Shown here: in pieces, positions 16,601-44,200 of the stretch
Layout: every line of letters starts with the position of its first letter
Numbering within the stretch: the first letter of the stretch is position 1
Assembly: GCF_048593235.1 (NCBI RefSeq)
Contig: NC_133622.1
Location: forward strand, 249,802,055 to 249,866,054
DNA length: 64,000 bases
Direction: 5' to 3'
Origin: Sminthopsis crassicaudata
Lineage: Eukaryota
Notes under the pieces: model-generated
Told to the model about the DNA's origin: nothing
Database searches by the model: none
Seen by the model: the letters and a program-made list of their open reading frames with translations, nothing else
Program-made: the position numbers and the translations under genes

Positions 16601-19268
16601 CAGAAATGAGAGACAGGAAAGAGACAGAGAGAAAAATAGAGATAAAGGAGAGAGACAGATAAATGAGAGACACAGAGAGCAGTGAGAGACACAGAGGAGA
16701 GACAGAAATGAGAGACAGAGGAAAGAGACAGAGAGAAAAGTTAGAGATAAAGAGGAGAGAGACAGAGACACAGAGGAGACAGACAGAAACAGATAAATGA
16801 GAGAGACAGAGCAATGAGAGACACAGAGAGGAGAGACAGACAGAAAGAAACAGATAAATGAGAGACACAGAGGAGAGACAGAAATGAGCGACAGAGGAAA
16901 GAGACAGAGAGAAAAATAGAGATAAAGAGGAGAGACAGAGACACAGAGAGGAGAGACAGAAAGAGACAGAGAGAGAAAAATTAGAGATAAAGGAGAGAGA
17001 CAGACACAGAGAAGAGACAGACAGAAACAGATAAATGAGAGAGACAGAGAGCAATCAGAGACACAGAGAGGAGAGACAGAAAGAAACAGATAAATGAGAG
17101 AGACAGAGCAATGAGAGACACACAGGAGAGACAGAAATAAAAGACAGAGGAAAGAGACAGAGAAAAATTAGAGATAAAGGACAGAGACAGAGATAGATAA
17201 AGAGGACAGAGACACAGAGAGGAGACAGACAGAAACAGATAAAGAGAAACAGAGAGGAGAGACAGAGACAGAGAGAGAGACAGACAGCGAGAACAATGAG
17301 AGACACAGAGAGGAGAGACAGAAAGAGACAGAAAAATTAGAGATAAAGGAGAGACAGATAGATAAAGAGGAGACAGAGACAGAAAGAAACAGATAAATGA
17401 GAGAAACAGAAATGAGAGATATGGACAGAGGAAAGAGAAAGAGAGAAAAATTAGAGATTAAGGAGAGACAGAGACAGATAAAGAGGAGAAAGAGAAAAAG
17501 ACAGGGAGACAGAAAAGAGCCAGAGAGAAAGCACAATGAGAGAGAAACAGAATGCTTTAGACTGTGTGTTGGAGACATAGCCACATGTTGGAGCCCATTT
17601 TCCCTCCCCTTCTTCCTGAAGCCAGATATTCTGGTCTCTGTGTCTTCTTCCAAACCATAGTGTCCTAAAGGGGCAAATCCCAGCCTCTGACCAGCTTTTG
17701 CCCTCTCCTTTCTCTACTCCAAGTCTTCCTGCCCCTCCCCTCCCATCCCATCCCTTCCCCATCCCACTCCTTTCCCAGAAGGCAGGCTTTGGTCTTGCTC
17801 CACACAAGCTATTAATCTGGATTATGCAACCCTGGCTTGGCCACCAAAAAAAACTCCCATGTTACCAACCATCCTTTTGATGCCCAAGGGAGGGACCATA
17901 ACTTCCCGGAAATTGAGGTCCTGCTCGGGTGGAGATGGCCGTGGAGTGATCCAGCTCTCCCGGCGACAGAGAAGGGATCAGGAAACTTTCCTGGGGAATT
18001 TCCCTTCGCTGTTCCAGGCACGGAGGCTGTGGGTCCACTCCTGGCTTCCCGGGCCCTGAGCCTTCTCTTCCTCCAGGTGGGTGATACCCTTCCATCTGTG
18101 GAGGTATTTGAGGGAGAGCCAGGCAAGAAAGTGAACTTGGCGGAGCTGTTCAAGGGCAAGAAGGGGGTGCTCTTTGGAGTTCCTGGAGCTTTCACACCAG
18201 GCTGTTCCAAGGTAAGAAATGATGCTTAACAGGACCTAGCTGTGTTAGGGTGAAATGAGCTCCCTTTGGGGGGCCCTTATCACCCTTGTTTTGGGCACCG
18301 GAGAAGTACGGGTTAGATAAGCAGTCCCTTCCCACTCTCTTGAGTGGGATCCTTGGAAGATCCAAGGGGAAATGGAGGACTTGGGGAGGACCTGGGGAGG
18401 GGGGAGAAGGCAGGGTGAGAAAGGCTGTAGGGCTGCTAACCCCTGTGCTCTGGTTCCCCAGACCCACCTACCTGGATTTGTGGAGCAGGCTGAAGCCCTG
18501 AAGGCCAAGGGGGCCGAGGTGGTGGCTTGTCTCACTGTCAACGATGTCTTTGTAGTCAGTGAGTGGGGCCTAGCACAAAAGGCTGCAGGGAAGGTGAGGC
18601 CCTGGGGGAGGGACACTGGGTGGGGAGGGCTCATTGAGAGGAGGGGCAGCAGAGGAGGCTGACCCCCCCTACTTGTTCTTCTATCTCCAGGTTCGGCTTC
18701 TGGCTGACCCCACGGGGGCCTTTGGGAAGGTGAATCTTTGCTGTCACTCTTGGGGACCAACTTGAGAAAGGGGGGCAGCCACCACAGCCGGAGATCCCTG
18801 GGGCCTGGCTCGGGGCGGGGAGAGGCAGGAGGGAGTCGGTTGGTTGGGGGCCCATCCCAGTTGAGTCACTTCCTAGCTCCTCCTGGGGCCTGTGAAATGA
18901 TAGGGCTGCACTAAAGCTCCCCAAAGCCGCCAGGTTCGTTCTGGGGGTGGGGTCCGGACGGTGACCTTCCTTGGTGACCTTGGCCTCTCTCCCCCCTCCC
19001 TCTCCTAGGCAGCAGAGCTGCTCCTGGACGACTCCCTCGTGCCCCTGTTTGGGAACCATCGTCTGAAGAGGTGAGTGCTCCAAAGCCCTCTGCAGGCAGT
19101 CCTCCCTCCCCCCCTCCCCCATGTGCCCCTGGGCGTCCCCTGACCCCTGTGACCATCTGCAGGTTCTCCATGGTGGTGCAGGATGGCGTTGTGAAAGCTC
19201 TGAACGTGGAGCCAGACGGCACTGGTCTCACCTGCAGCCTCGCCCCCAACCTCCTGTCGCAGCTCTGA
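13619..19268 (+). CDS. PRDX5: Peroxiredoxin-5; exons 13619-13765, 18077-18211, 18462-18593, 18691-18729, 19009-19070, 19163-19268; 206 aa, with a second in-frame ATG at 13751
   Basis: Arg/Ala-rich presequence, then MAPIK|VGD, peroxidatic motif PGAFTPGCSK|THLPG, resolving Cys in TGLTCSL, and a C-terminal SQL PTS1. Confidence 0.98.
14641..17550 (+). repeat. About 2.9-kb purine-rich (GA/GACA/GAAA) compound satellite in PRDX5 intron 1
   Basis: Recurring blocks gagacagaaatgagagacagaggaaagagacagagagaaaaatagagataaag; the + strand is almost all A/G. Confidence 0.97.
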
Positions 19269-19341
19269 AGCCTGAACCCCAGGGAGACAGCGCCAGCTGG
19301 CGTCCGGGCCCCCACCTCTAGGTGCCCCTCTCGAGGCTCTC

Positions 19342-19347
19342 AATAAA
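19342..19347 (+). terminator. PRDX5 polyadenylation signal AATAAA
   Basis: AATAAA 74 nt after the stop codon. Confidence 0.8.
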
Positions 19348-19644
19348 ACATGTCCGTTCGCTGACTCGAGGCTCTCCTTTCTGCTGGGGGCATCTCAGGG
19401 CAGAAGACAATGGAGGGCCAGTCTCCTACAGCACAAGGGATGGCATGGGCCCAAGGGGGCAAGTCTCCTCTTGGTGTGGGCGACCAGGGTGGGCTCTGGG
19501 GAGACCAGTCTCAGTCTGGGGTATCTGGTGTGACAGAGCGTCTGTGGGGGGGCGGGGCGGGGCGGGGAGAGCTTCCTCCCGTGGCCATCCATCCTCCACC
19601 ATTGCTCAAGTCTGGACTCAGACTCCCTGGGTTCTCTCTCTGGA

Positions 19645-20200
19645 GGTAGAGGGCATTTTTCACCACAGATCCTTCAAAATGGTCTTGGATCATCACGTTA
19701 ATCCCGATGGCGCCGTCATTCATGGTTGGTCACGGCGCCCCATTGCTGTTTCTGTGCCTTTCTGGTTCCGCTCACCTCACTTTGCATGGGTACACACATG
19801 TCTTCTGGGCTTTTCTGAACATCTCCCTCCTCATCTCTGATATTCCATCAACCTGTCCAGCCATTCCCCATTTCATGGACATCCCCTCAATTTCCAGTCC
19901 TTAGCCACCACAAAAAGAATTGCTAGAAAGATTTTTGTACGTTTAGGTCCTTTTCCTTTCCCTCTTTGGGGAAAGTGCTCTTGCTGGTTCACAAGTTCAT
20001 AGCCCTTAGGACAATTCCAGTTATTCTCCAGAATGGTTGAGCTAACTCATGGCTGCACCCACAGGGCATCAACATGCCCGGTTCCCCACAGCCTCTCCAC
20101 CAATAGTCACTTTCCTTATTTTTTGGTCATTTTTGTCAATCTGTAAAGCACTTTGCAAACCTTAAATCTCTCTACAAGTACCTGGAATTATTTTTTAAAT
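19645..20200 (-). mobile_element. Old L1 3'-region fragment
   Basis: ccagccattcccc..ggacatcccctcaatttccagtcctt.gccaccacaaaaaga..ctccagaatggttg, a marsupial L1 3' motif repeated elsewhere in the window. Confidence 0.6.
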
Positions 20201-21260
20201 TTTCTTGGGAAAGATTGAAGGTCAAATAAAAAGGGATGGCAAAGGGTGAGAGGGAGAGACAGAGCCATGGAAACAACGAACGTAAACCGGGACAGGCTTA
20301 GGGAGAGAACGGAGGATGGAGGACTTAGTGTACTGTGGTTAAGAAGAGTTAGACAGGATCCAGCGACTGAACAACAAGCAGCAGAGCGCTTTTAATTGGG
20401 AGGTGGTGGATTGAGAAGCAGCATGCCTGGGGGTGGATTTATTTTGGATTCTGTATGCTGCTGAAACCATGAGTTTTGTCCATTATAACATGATACTATT
20501 AAGGTTGAAAATTATATCAGTTCTTTAGGCGATTGTCCTTCCCTCCCATGATTTTGTGAGTTGAAGATAGTCCTGGGTGGGAGCACGGGGCCTTCTGGGG
20601 GCCATCGCCAGCTGTCTCGACTCTTGCCTTGCCACTGGGCACCAATAACTCTGGACTAGGTCCTCCATGAGCCTCGCCTATGTCGGGAGAAGGGCCCCAG
20701 TTAGGAGCCAGGCTAGGTCCACTGTGATCCCTGGCTCTGCTTCTCAATGACCTTAAGTGTTGCTAGGCGAGCCTACCTTTGTCTTTATCAGACATCCTCT
20801 TGGGTCTGCTCTCTCCTCCTTGCGCTTCTACTCTCCCTCCCTCCATCCCCTGTCTTTCTGGTGTTTCTGGTCTGAGTTATCTCTGGGCCTGTTGAAAGGT
20901 CAGATGGTCAGGAAGACTGACCACAAAGTAAGGGAGTAGAGCGCTGAGGTTAGAGGACCTTGGTTCAATGCAGTCCCAAACCACCCTGAGCCTCTTTTCC
21001 CTGGGGCCAGTGGCCCGTGCTGTGGGTTAGGCGCTCTGTGACTGGGATTTGCTTTTTAAAAAAAAAGTCAGACAAGCCTGGACCTGCCCCAGAATATGAC
21101 CCAGGACCAAGCATGCTGAGCTCTGGGTACGGGTGGATTGTGGATTCCAGCTTGGGTCACCCTCGCCCTCCCATTGATGGGCCTTCACAGCTAAGCAAGC
21201 ACTGACAGGAGAGAGCCTGGCTTACTGTCCGAGTTACTCCCAGAAGCTAGCAGGGAGGAG

Positions 21261-21826
21261 CACTGATAGGATCTTTTTTTTTTTTTTTTTTGCTTAATCA
21301 GCAAGCATTTATTAAGCACCTCTGTGTGCCTGGCATTGTATTACATGCTGGGGATGAAAAGACAAATAGTCTTTATTTTCAACAAAGTATCAATATGTTT
21401 GATTGGTATGCCATAGTGTCAAATGCAAACTCCTTTGTTGGGCCACCTGTCTCCTTTTCTTTTCTTTTCTTTTTTTTAGTAGCTTTTTATTTTCAAAACA
21501 TATGCATGGATAATTTTTTCAACACTGATCCTTACATAGCCTTGTGTTCCAAATTTTCCTCTCCTTCCCCCCACCCCCACCCCTAAATGGTAAGCAACCA
21601 ATATATGTTATACATGTTACAATATATGTTAAATCCAGCCTATATAAACATATTTGTGCAATTATCTTGTTGCACAAGAAAAATCAGATCAAGAAGAAAA
21701 GAAAAGGAATAAGAAAACAAATGCAAACAAACAAAGTTGCGGTCCACACTCAGTTCCCACTGTCCCCTCTCTGGGTGTAAATCATCCCAAGATCATTGGA
21801 ACTGGACTCACACTGATAGGATCTTT
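21261..21826 (-). mobile_element. 5'-truncated L1 insertion with 3' transduction, flanked by a target-site duplication
   Basis: TSD cactgataggatc(ttt) at 21261-21276 and 21811-21826. Inside are an L1 3' end (21478-21810), its A-rich tail (21454-21477), about 160 bp of non-L1 sequence, and a second poly(A) (T18, 21274-21291). Confidence 0.85.
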
Positions 21827-22082
21827 ATTAGGGCTTTATTTCGATTCGCCCTGGTTGAATTCTTTGTTCAATTCCTTGCACTGATGAATTCTATGTTTCT
21901 GTATCTAATCAGAAGGTTAAGTTATGATATCAACCACTGATAATAATAATTAATAATAATAAATCTAATAAAAGAGCCTTATTTATATAATTTTAATTAT
22001 ATAGATTATATATTTATTATGTAATAATTATTTATAATAATAATAATAAATCTAATAAAAGAGCCTACTTATAGCTCACTCC

Positions 22083-22496
22083 TGTTAGGACCCTAACTCT
22101 TTTTAGGATTAGCCCAGCAATGGCAGAATCCCAATGGCTAACTCCTTAGCCCAACTGACATAATCCCTAGCTAACCTTTTTTTTAGGAATTTAGCCCACC
22201 TTATGGCAGCAAGTTCTTTAAGAACTTGCCTTACCTTTATGGCGTCTTTCCCCTTAAAGGTATATTCCCCCTGCTCACTTGTGAACTCTGTTAGGGAATT
22301 TAGCTTGTGTCTTTCTCCTTTCTTCTCTAAAAGTCCTATATAGAAAGTAAGCCCTCTGTTATATAATAAAAAGTAGATAAATTTTTTGCCTCTTGATTTG
22401 GAGATGATCTAAGTGTACAATTCTTTTTGAGATACCTCTTAATACCAGCCTAAGACCTCAATTTATTTTGAAGGTCCCAATCCCTTCTCCCCAACA
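22083..22496 (+). mobile_element. Probable ERV/LTR-retroelement long terminal repeat
   Basis: TGTTAGG...CCCCAACA termini, internal TATA-like and AATAAA (about 22366) motifs, followed directly by TTTGGTAG, a PBS-like position. Confidence 0.55.
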
Positions 22497-24049
22497 TTTG
22501 GTAGAGAGTCCTAAAACCCCAATATATTATTTGTGGTTCAGCACTTCTATACCATTGTACCCCATTATTTGGTGGCCTTGTATGGGGAGAGTAACTCCTG
22601 TATCCCATTACCATCACATCAGTTTTGCTCGTTTTGCTTCAATCCAGAGTTTTCTTTGGAAAATGTCAGATCATAGATCTCTTCACAGATATGAGTAAAA
22701 AAAGGTTCCTAGATTCTGTTCCTAGAATCTGTATTTGTGCCCAAGGGAATGGTGCATGTTAGGTATAAGGCAGCCTGCATTTGTCCCACAGAAATTATAA
22801 GAGAAAACCGAAAAGACTTGTAGGCTCCTAAAAGAATCAGTGCACTTCTCCTCCCTCCTCACCCTAAGACCTCATACAGGTTTCCAACCTCATGAATGAA
22901 AATGTATTTATTAAGTACTTAGCCTAGGCTAGATTTGGTAATGGGTGCTGGTGATAAAAATAGAAAGGAATAGTGGAGCTTATGCACTGGTAGGGGAAAC
23001 ACCATACACGTGGGCAGTGATGGCCTAAGAGGGCAGCTTCGTTCTGGAAAGTCACAGGGATGGTGAGTGGACTCATGTGACAGATCAGCCGAGAAGATTG
23101 AGGGAGAGATGGGTCAACTATGAAGAGAACCAGGAGAGAGCAGGGTCACCAAAACTTAGGGAGAAGAGTATATCTAAGAGGAAAAGGTGCTGGAGAACTC
23201 AGAAGAGCACAATGGATTTGGCAAAGAGGAGAGCTGTGATGACCACATTAGCTCCCTGGATACCTTAGAATCAGCTGGAGTCAGGATAAGCAAAAGTCCT
23301 TGGTCTTTATTCTTGGTCTTTAGGGGTAGAAGTGAATTGGATGGATGCAGGATCTCCAGGACCTCTTCTCTTTGTTTATCGCCCAAAAGTCACTGGCTAG
23401 TCTTACTCCACCCTCTAGTCCCTCCTACAACTCTCTGTATACAATTATCAAGCCAGTACAGTATAGTGGGAAGGGCCATTTTCCAAGCACATGCTAATAG
23501 AGTATTGTCCAATCAGTAATTATCCTTAAGTGCTATGTTGTCCGACCTCAGTGCATCAACTCAAGAGTTTCAGCCCTTTACAGAGATCCTTGAGATTGAT
23601 GGGGCATCTGTTCCTTACTGTAAAAGCTGGCTCAAATCTCTCTCCTTCAGCAAGCTCTCCCTGATTTTTTTGGTCCTTCCACCTTGAGCCTTACCTATCA
23701 CTGTCTTCATCTCTGATATCCTTATCACAAAATACTATATATTAAGGTTATCTGTGTTAGTATATTGTTCCCCTACTTGACTATGAAGGCAAGAATCATG
23801 CCTTATCTTCATTTTGTGTCTTTTCTTAACCTCATATAGGGTGCTACATATAGGAGGTGCTTAATGAATGCTTGTATTTTGTAGGGATACGCATTGGCTG
23901 TGGGAAGAGACATCTCCCGTTGGATCTACAGGTAAGGGCTGTGAGACTTCTTTTAGAGGATTATGATAGGCTCATAGGTCATATAGTGGGAAAGTGAAGG
24001 CTAGAACTAGACCAAAGAATTCCTTAATTCTTTTCTATTCCATAGATAT

Positions 24050-41200: not shown

Positions 41201-44200
41201 GCGAGCCCGCTCCATCCCTGCCCCTGGCTTCCCTGCGGGACTTCCAGGCTCCCTGCGCTGCCCCGGGCCCAGGCTCCTCCTCGCTCTGCAGGCGCAGGTG
41301 CTGTCGGGCCAGGCCAGGAGAGCCACTGTGTACCGAGAGGAGGCAGAGACGCTCCGGGAGCGGGCCGGGCGCCTGCCCCGGCTGCAGGAGGAGCTGCGGA
41401 GGTGCCGGGAGAGGCTCCACGCGGCCGAGGCTTACAAGGGCCAGCTGGAGGTGAGAGGGAGGGGCTGGTCATTAAGTCCAGGGGGAGTCCTTCATTTGAC
41501 AGATGGGGAAACTGAGGCCCAGAGAAGTGAATTGTTTGAGGGCACGTGGCTGACTTAGCAAATTGGCCTGCCTTTCTCAGGTGTCCCATTCCAGCTAAGG
41601 GGCAGCAGGGGGAGTAGGCCAGAAAGCCGTGGGTCCCACTCCTGGCTCATGCTAGCTGGGGGGGGGAGCGACCTCAGGAGCAGACCCCAATCACGTCATG
41701 TACGGCAGATGTCTGCACATGTTCCCCACTACTAAGTGGGAGCCCCTTTATTATGTGTGGGGATCTGCCGTGGGCCGTGCTGGCTGGTGGAAAGAACACA
41801 AGAGCTGAAGCCAGAGGAGCGAGTGGTCATCTGACTCTGCTGCTGAGAACCTGGCACAAGCCTTCTCCTCTCGGGGCCTCAGTTTCCCCTTCTGCACAGT
41901 CAAGGGCTCATAGTAGCTGATCTCCAGGAGCAGGCCCTTTCCCGATCCGCTTCTTCCTCCCCAGGAGGAGCGGGCCCTGTCGGGAGCACTGGAAGCTGCC
42001 CGGGCGTTGCTGGAGGGGCAGCTGGACGCCGCCCGGGAACGCTGCTCTCGTCTCCATGAGACCCAGAGGGAGAACCTCTTGCTGCGGGCCCGGCTTGGGG
42101 AGGCCCAAGTGGTGAGGGCAAGGTGACCCCGACCCCAGGTGGCTTCCCCATGGAGTGGCTCCTTTCTCTGTGACCCTTGACCCCTGACCCTTGGCCCAGA
42201 CAGACACCAATGGCCTTCTGGGAGCCATATGTGTGTGGAGGCAAGGAATTCTTTCTCTCTTGGGCATCCCCAGGAGTTGGAATCCACCCGACAACAGCTG
42301 GACAAGCTGGTGGAGGAGAATGTGGAGCTGGAGGCGGAGCTGAGTCGGACCTTGCAGCCCCCCGGCCCCTGCTCTCCTGGGGATGGTGAGAGGGGTCTCC
42401 AGAGGCTCCAGGAGTGGGTGGGGAGCAGCTGTTCAGCCTAGTGGGAAGATCCAGGGGGATCTGGAATCAGAGGATCATTTGCTTCCCTATCTCCTTCTAC
42501 CTGTACACCTCTGAGCAACTCACTTACCCCCTCCTGGCCTCAGTTTCCCCTATTGGAAGGTTTGGTCTTAGCTTCTTAAATTTTTCTACTCATACTCCTT
42601 TTTGCCTGAGAAAATTTTACATGACCCTGGGTGTGTAGGTATATGAAATGGGCATCCACATCAAATATTTACCGATAATAAAGCGTGATTTTGCGACCCT
42701 CACATTCAGTCTGGGACCCCCTATGGGTTAGGGAAGCAGTTGCAGAAGCCGGGGTCTAGAAGAGCCTCTCCCAGCCAGAGCTCCTGGGCAAGCAGCAAGA
42801 ACCCCAATCGACTTTGTGACTTATGATGTGGAAAAAAAAAATCACACCAGCAGTAGTTGGGACAGTTTCGGTCCAGTGGGAGGAGAGATCAGTGACTATA
42901 GTGACTCATGGGTTACCATAGTGCTTCACAGTTGCCTATTATNNNNNNNNNNNNNNNNNNNNNNNNNNNNNNNNNNNNNNNNNNNNNNNNNNNNNNNNNN
43001 NNNNNNNNNNNNNNNNNNNNNNNNNNNNNNNNNNNNNNNNNNNNNNNNNNNNNNNNNNNNNNNNNNNNNNNNNNNNNNGGTCACATTTGAACTCAGGTCC
43101 TCCTGACTTCAGGGCTGGTGCTCTGTCCACTGCGCCCCCTAGCTGCCCCCTGTTTTCTGTTTTCACTAATTATTCTTGCTAAGCTGCAGATTCACTAGTT
43201 GCCAAGTTCATTTGTTTCTGCACAGTTGTTGTTGCTCTGTCAACAAAAACTTATTAATTTAAGTGTCGGGCACTGGGTTAAAGTTATAGGAGGTCATGGG
43301 TTCCATTTTTGCCTAGAACAGGACTTTGGTGCCTTTCCTAGTCCGACTCTGCCTCTAAATCCGCACCTCCCTTTTCTGGGCTTTAGCCAAAGCCGTAAAG
43401 ACGGGCAGACATTGAGTTCCGGGCAGGGCTCAGCCTTCCTTGAGCGACCTCCAACGTCTCTGTGCCCGTTTGGCTGGGAGGGCTGGAGCTGTGGGCAGAG
43501 GGAGGCAAGCTGCCTCTGGGGAGTGGGGCTCCGCATCTCTCAGCAGGTCCTGATGTTGCCCCCTTCTTCTCCCTCTTGTAGCGCCCCAGCCTTTCTGGGC
43601 GCCCTCCTTGCAGGATGAAGTGAGAGCAGTAGAGGCAGGGTGCCTGCGGAGCTTGGAGCAGGAGAACCGGGACCTGCGAGCTCAGCTTCAGGAGCTGAAG
43701 GCAAGGAGATGGAGCCAGGTACATTAGCGATACCCGGCCCAGTTCCCCAAACCCCTTGGCCCCGTTTCCTGAACTTTGCCCTTCCCCTCTGGTGCCTTGC
43801 TACTTCTGAGTGTCTTTTCCAGCCTCCCTTGACTGAGGTGGAAGATGAAGAATCGGAGATCGCCAGATGGGAGGAAACCCGCCAGGTCTTGGGGCCTTCA
43901 GGCATTGGTCATGGCCATGAAAAATCTCTGCTGGTTGCAGAAGGGTCAGTGGTCCAGTGCTCCGGACCCTCACACTCAGCAGGGGCCCAGCCTAATGCTT
44001 CTGAGGAGGCAGAGAAGCCAGTCGGAGCTCAGGACCCGGAACCTTTGGCCTTGACCCCACCACACCCGGAAGGGAAGCTTGTGCAAGGGAAAAGGCTAGA
44101 AGGGGAAATGGAGGCTGCTTCCGGGGACTTGAAAAGGAGGGTCTCAAGGACCGATCATAAACCTTTGGAACCAAGGCATGAGGGGGAGCCGGGGGGCCAG

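What the first reader, a model, noticed from the sequence alone, without database searches (positions are those of the whole stretch)
21261..21826. L1-mediated 3' transduction that captured about 160 bp of foreign DNA using an L2-derived poly(A) signal
On the minus strand the order is: 5'-truncated L1 3' end (21810-21478) with its own AATAAA (21491-21486) and A-rich tail (21477-21454); about 160 bp of non-L1 sequence; AATAAA (21313-21308) inside an L2-tail-like motif ggtgcttaataaatgc; 16 nt; then A18. The whole unit is bracketed by a 13-16-bp TSD (cactgataggatcttt) with an L1-endonuclease-like CTTT/AT site. The transduced tag should identify the source L1 locus. I am not aware of many documented marsupial cases.
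Basis: partly seen in the sequence, partly recalled or inferred. Interest (0 to 1): 0.7.

Follow-up and report, generated by a model that had tools for sequence, protein, structure and literature searches.

The report
Old L1 insertion carrying flanking DNA
A 566-bp retrotransposon insertion downstream of PRDX5 in a dasyurid marsupial joins an L1 3' end to about 160 bp of non-L1 DNA inside one target-site duplication; this is most likely an ordinary, old L1 3' transduction, and its donor locus could not be found.

Summary
The anatomy is exactly as described. On the minus strand the order is: TSD, whole L1 3'UTR, patterned A-rich tail, 162 bp of non-L1 DNA, A-run, TSD. The non-L1 DNA ends 16 nt after an AATAAA in a MIR/L2-type tail. 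The 16-bp repeat is exact and far beyond chance.

The L1 identity is shown. Other window copies that align to it lie directly downstream of L1 ORF2p C-terminal coding sequence (E = 6.6e-21).

The first ~100 nt of the captured piece are essentially single-copy. Its last ~60 nt are a dispersed repeat.

A 3' transduction remains the best reading (about 0.6), but two points change.
1. The insertion is not young. Contigs of two other organisms, about 10-13% diverged, bridge the flank/TSD/L1 5' junction, so no empty site was seen.
2. The donor locus was not found. Those relatives each hold one copy of the captured piece (~91% alike), in contigs that run on for 1.4-1.7 kb into DNA unlike the window's flank. 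This could be the orthologue with a later insertion, or the donor locus.

L1 3' transductions are already documented in Tasmanian devil tumours, and this scan noted other unverified candidates elsewhere in this genome. The finding is ordinary.

The parts
21811..21826 (-). 5' target-site duplication (AAAGATCCTATCAGTG on the minus strand)
   Evidence: Exact 16-nt direct repeat with 21261-21276. Contigs of organisms B and C run across it from the flank into the L1 (records 30 and 15).
21823..21828 (+). L1 endonuclease-type nick site CTTT/AT on the strand opposite the element
   Evidence: Read directly from the sequence. The comparison with the consensus TTTT/AA is from my own knowledge.
21478..21810 (-). 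5'-truncated L1: essentially the whole 3'UTR, starting about at the ORF2 stop
   Evidence: It aligns at 70-77% to five other window copies that all end at ...TTTTGAAAATAAAAAGCT plus an A-tail. Two of those copies lie directly downstream, on the same strand, of L1 ORF2p C-terminal coding sequence (PDB 9k6g/8uw3: E 6.6e-21 and 1e-12). About 26,000 contigs per run lie on it.
21486..21491 (-). L1's own AATAAA, bypassed under the transduction reading
   Evidence: the hexamer is conserved in the other copies that reach the L1 3' end.
21454..21477 (-). Internal A-rich tail with an (AAAAG) pattern
   Evidence: Four regularly spaced G's, against none in the terminal A-run. This suggests a tail that was copied from DNA, or one older than the terminal A-run.
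21354..21453 (-). Captured non-L1 DNA, unique part (about 100 nt)
   Evidence: No other copy in the window. At 21406-21414 only one contig lies on it in each of X1 and X3, and one each in B and C.
21372..21377 (-). Internal AATAAA inside the captured DNA
   Evidence: In the copies of B and C the first A is G, giving GATAAA (table 3, place 21377). The hexamer may therefore have arisen after the event.
21292..21353 (-). Captured DNA, MIR/L2-type 3' tail carrying the used AATAAA (21313-21308) and the cleavage site 16 nt further on
   Evidence: About 74% alike over 50 nt to 47503-47454, and 20 of 21 to 23854-23874 (alignment). Depth over 21310-21360 is about 12 times the single-copy flank in X1 and is raised in all four runs.
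21277..21291 (-). Terminal poly(A); the pure A-run of 18 reaches 21274
21261..21276 (-). 3' target-site duplication

Best explanation
This is one L1 target-primed reverse transcription event, older than the split of this organism from two related organisms. An L1 at another locus was transcribed past its own weak AATAAA and through its DNA-encoded, degenerate A-tail. Transcription continued into about 162 nt of downstream DNA. The RNA was cleaved and polyadenylated 16 nt after an AATAAA supplied by an old MIR/L2-type tail.

L1 endonuclease nicked CTTT/AT in the PRDX5-CCDC88B intergenic region. Reverse transcription stopped about at the ORF2 stop, and a 13-16-bp duplication formed.

Shown: the anatomy, the L1 identity, the near single-copy state of the captured piece, the repeat nature of its last 60 nt, and the presence of the 5' junction in relatives. 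Inferred: the read-through itself and the existence of a donor L1.
For: - One exact 16-nt TSD encloses L1, tail, foreign DNA and A-run. No second convincing TSD surrounds the foreign piece; AAAAG is the most that can be found.
- The L1 part ends exactly where the other window copies that reach the 3' end do.
- The internal tail is patterned while the terminal A-run is pure, as expected if the internal tail was transcribed from DNA.
- AATAAA plus 16 nt plus the A-run is the signature of real polyadenylation.
- The bypassed internal hexamer reads GATAAA in relatives.
- The captured piece is not a SINE: 21406-21414 is single-copy and there is no tRNA or Rfam match.
- Hint of a second locus in the same organism. 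X3 record 18 (150 nt, depth 15.9) matches the L1 3' end at about 86% and would reach 21425. The depth at 21427 in X3 is 8.03 + 15.9. X1 has about two extra copy-equivalents there, and B and C have none.
- 3' transduction by dasyurid L1 is documented.
Against: - No donor locus was demonstrated.
- In relatives B and C the only contigs with the captured piece (records 24 and 10, about 91% alike) run on 1411 and 1757 nt past the poly(A) site without matching the window's flank. Other contigs hold the flank at 21208-21263, and in C record 9 holds 20864-21137.
- If those contigs are orthologous, an extra insertion of at least 1.4-1.7 kb in B and C is needed.
- No full second copy at 85% likeness or more was seen in the same organism.
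Confidence: 0.6

Rival explanations
1. Two events. An old, plain 5'-truncated L1 insertion is shared with the relatives. Later, and only in this lineage, a short polyadenylated retrocopy landed in the end of the L1's A-rich tail. The retrocopy would be an orphan transduction or the 3' end of some transcript.
For: - Relatives carry the L1 5' junction, yet each holds the 162-nt piece only once, in contigs whose sequence past the poly(A) site is not the window's flank.
- The divergence of that piece (about 9-10%) is no greater than that of the orthologous flanks (10-13%).
- The old patterned tail beside a pure A-run fits two ages.
- The original 3' TSD can be read straight after ...GAAAAG.
Against: - The parent copy should then be present and very similar in this organism. 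Two samples show only the focal contig at 21406-21414. The tool's filter for human-like contigs could hide it.
- The only possible TSD for the second event is AAAAG, with a poor TTTT/C nick site.
- B's contig ends 13 nt past 21444, at the tail.
- C's 300-nt overhang would end within a few letters of where its junction contig stops (21743) if laid colinear. Both points are coincidences under this reading.
- Such insertions of unique retrocopies exactly at an L1 tail are rare compared with transductions (my own knowledge).
Confidence: 0.13
2. A template-switch chimera made in one event. L1 reverse transcriptase began on the poly(A) tail of a cellular transcript that ends at the MIR/L2-type signal. 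It copied 162 nt, then jumped to the poly(A) tail of an L1 RNA and copied its 3'UTR.
For: - A single TSD encloses both parts.
If that contig is the parent locus, it has no L1.
Against: - A post-transcriptional internal tail should have started pure, like the terminal A-run of the same age. Instead it carries four regularly spaced G's, against none in 18.
- There is a hint of another unitig in this organism that joins an L1 3' end and tail to the start of the 162 nt.
- Chimeras with L1-poly(A) as the 5' part are far less often described than transductions (my own knowledge).
Confidence: 0.08
3. No retro-capture took place. The 162 nt and what follows it in the relatives are the original flank of an old L1, and this lineage was rearranged at the DNA level.
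For: It would explain why the relatives' contigs continue from the 162 nt into other DNA, and why each organism has one copy.
Against: It cannot produce an A-run 16 nt after an AATAAA followed at once by an exact 13-16-nt copy of the sequence in front of the L1 5' end. Nor is there any TSD match between the L1 5' flank and the start of the 162 nt.
Confidence: 0.03

Closest known systems
L1 3' transduction (read-through of the weak L1 poly(A) signal, as described for human and mouse L1; somatic cases in Tasmanian devil DFT2 tumours, bioRxiv 10.1101/2022.05.27.493404)
   Same: L1 3' end, then an internal A-rich tail, then unique DNA, then a downstream AATAAA, then a new poly(A), all inside one TSD with an endonuclease-type target.
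   Different: It is a fixed germline copy, old enough to be shared with two related organisms. It is severely 5'-truncated, with the 3'UTR only. Its donor element is not identified.
L1-mediated chimeric retrocopies by template switching (U6-L1 and related chimeras)
   Same: Two unrelated transcripts are joined inside a single TSD.
   Different: Here the 5' part is an L1 3' end with a patterned A-tail rather than a small RNA. The order of the parts is the one expected from read-through.
Poly(A) sites supplied by MIR/L2 tails
   Same: The used AATAAA lies in the conserved ...GGTGCTTAATAAATG... tail motif, of which the window holds other copies.
   Different: Here it ended an L1 read-through transcript (inferred), not a gene's mRNA. 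MIR and L2 cannot be separated on 60 nt.

Membership tests
L1 3' transduction | L1 sequence in sense orientation that runs to the canonical L1 3' end | tested here: met
   Alignment to window L1 copies that all end at ...GAAAATAAAAAGCT plus an A-tail. Those copies follow ORF2p C-terminal coding sequence.
L1 3' transduction | Non-L1, non-repeat DNA directly after the L1 tail, ending in its own poly(A) 10-30 nt after a poly(A) signal | tested here: met
   A 162-nt segment. Its first 100 nt are single-copy. AATAAA is followed by 16 nt and an A-run of 18.
L1 3' transduction | One target-site duplication around the whole unit, with an endonuclease-type target | tested here: met
   Exact 16-nt repeat. 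CTTT/AT at the nick site.
L1 3' transduction | Donor locus: a longer L1 directly followed by the transduced DNA, which continues past the poly(A) site | tested here: inconclusive
   B and C contigs continue past the poly(A) site into other DNA, but an upstream L1 was not shown. One unitig of this organism (X3 record 18) appears to join an L1 3' end and tail to the first 20-29 nt.
L1 3' transduction | Empty target site in a relative or allele that lacks the whole unit | tested here: not met
   Contigs of B and C bridge the flank, TSD and L1 5' end (21743-21932). No listed joint skips the unit. This shows age and does not speak against the mechanism.
MIR/L2-type 3' tail | Similarity to other dispersed copies that end at the same tail motif | tested here: met
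   About 74% over 50 nt to 47503-47454 and 20 of 21 to 23854-23874 (alignment). Depth is about 12-fold in X1 and raised in all four runs. No consensus library was on hand, so the assignment to MIR or L2 is from memory.
Poly(A)-tailed SINE (WSINE1 and other CORE-SINEs) | tRNA-related head and CORE region, at high copy number | tested here: not met
   No tRNA or Rfam match. The first 100 nt are single-copy. The WSINE1 structure is as described in PMC3403934.

The most novel reading that the evidence does not exclude
The 162-nt piece was added to an already old L1 tail only in this lineage, after it split from the two relatives that were examined. It would then mark L1-driven retro-insertion later than the shared L1. 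The relatives' contigs would show the native locus of the captured transcript.
Probability: 0.13. Interest if true: 0.3.

Novelty: new member of a known kind. Interest (0 to 1): 0.15.

Why it matters
It matters little beyond annotation. It is one more fixed L1 insertion that carried flanking DNA, in an intergenic region about 2 kb downstream of the PRDX5 stop and antisense to the gene.

The captured tag could in principle identify an L1 source element that was active before these dasyurid lineages split. The case also shows that a perfect TSD and a pure A-run do not prove a recent insertion.

Tried and rejected
- **SINE reading of the captured piece:** rejected. There is no tRNA or Rfam hit. 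The first 100 nt are single-copy. WSINE1 has a tRNA head and CORE region.
- **Extended L1 3'UTR variant:** rejected. The other window copies that reach the L1 3' end stop at the canonical end, and the piece is single-copy.
- **Pfam on eight ORFs upstream of window L1 3' ends:** nothing found. A PDB sequence search of stop-free frames then gave L1 ORF2p.
- **Fishing for the relatives' contigs with the 98-aa ORF across the captured piece:** no candidates.
- **The search of earlier findings by sequence:** blank, which means nothing.
- **Paralogues of either flank in the window** (an empty-site test by paralogy): none.
- **Scans of metagenome and bacterial collections:** not run, because they cannot be expected to hold dasyurid DNA.

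Full report
**Observation.** Everything below is read on the minus strand.
- Sixteen bases, AAAGATCCTATCAGTG, lie at 21826-21811.
- L1-like sequence follows to 21478, with AATAAA at 21491-21486.
- A 24-nt tail, A8-G-A4-G-A4-G-A4-G, lies at 21477-21454.
- Then come 162 nt of other DNA (21453-21292). This stretch holds an internal AATAAA (21377-21372) and a terminal AATAAA (21313-21308) followed by 16 nt.
- An A-run of 18 lies at 21291-21274.
- The same sixteen bases recur at 21276-21261.

The repeat finder reports the pair as exact over 16 nt. Outside the PRDX5 intron satellite, only five complex exact direct repeats of 13 nt or more at 300-800 bp spacing occur in the 64 kb. At least two of the other four lie in homologous repeats. 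The position of this one, to the base at the L1 5' end and behind the A-run, is not chance. The nick site on the opposite strand reads CTTT/AT.

**L1 identity.** The 333-nt part matches five or more other stretches of the window at 70-77%. In the alignment, the copies that reach the 3' end all stop at ...TTTTGAAAATAAAAAGCT plus a few bases and an A-tail. The focal L1 therefore ends at its canonical 3' end.

Two of these copies (26004-25656 and 32439-32206) lie directly downstream, on the same strand, of frames that match the C-terminal part of human L1 ORF2p. Residues 1112-1178 match with E 6.6e-21, and residues 1094-1142 with E 1e-12. Homology to the focal copy starts about where ORF2 ends. 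The focal piece is therefore essentially the whole 3'UTR.

Pfam found nothing on eight larger ORFs.

**The captured piece.** It has no other copy in the window; only its last 50-60 nt find relatives. It gives no tRNA and no credible Rfam match.

The last 62 nt align to other window copies of the tail motif ...GCCAGGCAC...GGTGCTTAATAAATG... (alignment). From memory this is the shared MIR/L2 3' tail, and the two cannot be separated here.

Laid contigs agree. Over 21310-21360 the depth is about 12 times the single-copy flank in X1, and it is raised in all four runs. At 21406-21414 only one contig lies in each run.

The piece is not WSINE1 or another CORE-SINE, which have a tRNA-related head and a CORE region (PMC3403934).

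**Context.** PRDX5 exons lie on the + strand, with the last codons ending at 19265. The element is about 2 kb downstream, intergenic and antisense.

Three PRDX5 exons were compared one at a time. They match the Tasmanian devil protein at 119 of 124 residues and other marsupials at 114-115.

**Reads.** Twenty-two runs were listed, from four coded organisms. I laid two samples of the window's organism (X1, X3) and one run each of organisms B (X7) and C (X16) at 85% likeness. All are Logan contigs. The tool masks 21264-21301, 21445-21483 and 21933-21966, so piece ends at those borders are artefacts.

- **The window's structure is real.** X1 record 1 covers 17303-21499 without a mismatch. X3 records 16 and 17 cover 17303-21274 and 21245-21476.
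- **The insertion is shared, hence old.** B and C each have one contig (records 30 and 15) that runs from the upstream flank (22072-22300 and 21827-21932) across the TSD into the L1 as far as 21743. Both contigs end there. At 21833-21849 they are the only contig in each run, so they are single-copy. No empty site was seen among the listed joints. The orthologous flanks differ by about 10-13%.
- **The captured piece in B and C.** Each holds it once (records 24 and 10; 21302-21444; 12-13 mismatches and one gap). Other contigs of B and C cover 21208-21263, and in C record 9 covers 20864-21137. On the L1 side, B's contig ends 13 nt past 21444.
- **No second full copy in the window's own organism.** At 21427, however, the depth rises by about two copy-equivalents: to 182.9 against 64.6 in X1, and to 23.9 = 8.03 + 15.9 in X3. 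B and C show nothing extra there. X3 record 18 (150 nt, depth 15.9) matches the L1 3' end at about 86% and would reach 21425. It looks like a second locus that joins an L1 end and tail to the start of the captured piece.

**Weighing.** The anatomy favours one event. There is a single long TSD and no usable inner TSD; AAAAG is the most that can be found, with a poor nick site.

The patterned inner tail next to a pure terminal A-run fits a tail transcribed from DNA. That favours read-through from a donor L1 over a jump onto an L1 RNA's poly(A).

The bypassed inner hexamer reads GATAAA in B and C (place 21377). It may not have been a signal at the time.

The relatives' data fit no model cleanly.

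- **If records 24 and 10 are orthologous.** A later insertion of at least 1.4-1.7 kb in the stem of B and C, within the A-run or TSD, must be assumed. Three points favour orthology.
  - There is one copy per organism, at orthologous divergence.
  - B's contig breaks at the tail, as the contigs of the window's organism do.
  - C's 300-nt overhang would overlap record 15's end by the usual 30 nt if C lacks the focal 21-nt tandem duplication (21599-21631) and a few tail bases.
- **If they are the donor or native locus.** The daughter copies of B and C are then missing, and the L1 upstream in C is not seen.
- **A two-step history** (old L1, later retrocopy into its tail in this lineage). This needs the parent copy in this organism, which two samples do not show. 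The tool's filter for human-like contigs could hide it.

I put 3' transduction at 0.6, a nested second insertion at 0.13, template switching at 0.08 and DNA-level rearrangement at 0.03. The rest is left open.

**Limits.**
The orthologous PRDX5-downstream regions of the devil and other marsupials (protein ids) could therefore not be read.
- A protein-word search with the 98-aa ORF across the captured piece found nothing.
- The single calls of the look-up of sequencing runs and read laying are spent.
- No tool here searches a marsupial genome.

**Known or new.** The mechanism is textbook. For dasyurids, somatic L1 insertions with 3' transductions from 35 source elements are reported in devil facial tumour 2 (bioRxiv 10.1101/2022.05.27.493404). 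Germline L1 activity after WSINE1 silencing is discussed in PMC4408412. This scan has noted other unverified candidate transductions elsewhere in this genome. This is one more member of a known kind, and it is older than it looks.

Noticed in passing
window 21599-21631: The focal L1 3'UTR carries a 21-nt tandem duplication (CAATATATGTTA at 21599 and at 21620). The other window L1 copies lack it.
   Followed up: partly
window 21415-21444: The window's organism has about two extra copy-equivalents of contigs here, and B and C have none. At least one (X3 record 18) seems to carry an L1 3' end and tail joined to the start of the captured DNA. It may be a donor or a sibling locus.
   Followed up: partly
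window 21406-21414: Five differences within 9 nt separate the focal copy from the copies of B and C. Four of them are shared by B and C (table 3).
   Followed up: no
window 21933-22071 and 21138-21207: Contigs of B and C skip about 139 nt of AT-rich DNA upstream of the element. Neither covers 21138-21207 downstream. These are lineage-specific indels or fast divergence next to the insertion.
   Followed up: no
window 25100-33200 and 51000-54100: Clusters of older, broken L1 copies on both strands. Their ORF2 C-terminal frames are still recognisable, for example 26544-26329 and 33122-32955. Assembly gaps lie at 28086-28239, 42943-43078 and 50762-50904.
   Followed up: partly
window 18077-19265: PRDX5 exons lie on the + strand. 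Three exons match Tasmanian devil PRDX5 at 119 of 124 residues and other marsupials at 114-115. The genome is a dasyurid other than the devil.
   Followed up: partly
window 21820-22230: The upstream flank of the insertion is AT-rich. It is a low- to middle-copy repeat in all four runs, at 2-20 times single-copy depth. Its kind was not determined, and it has no paralogue in the window.
   Followed up: no
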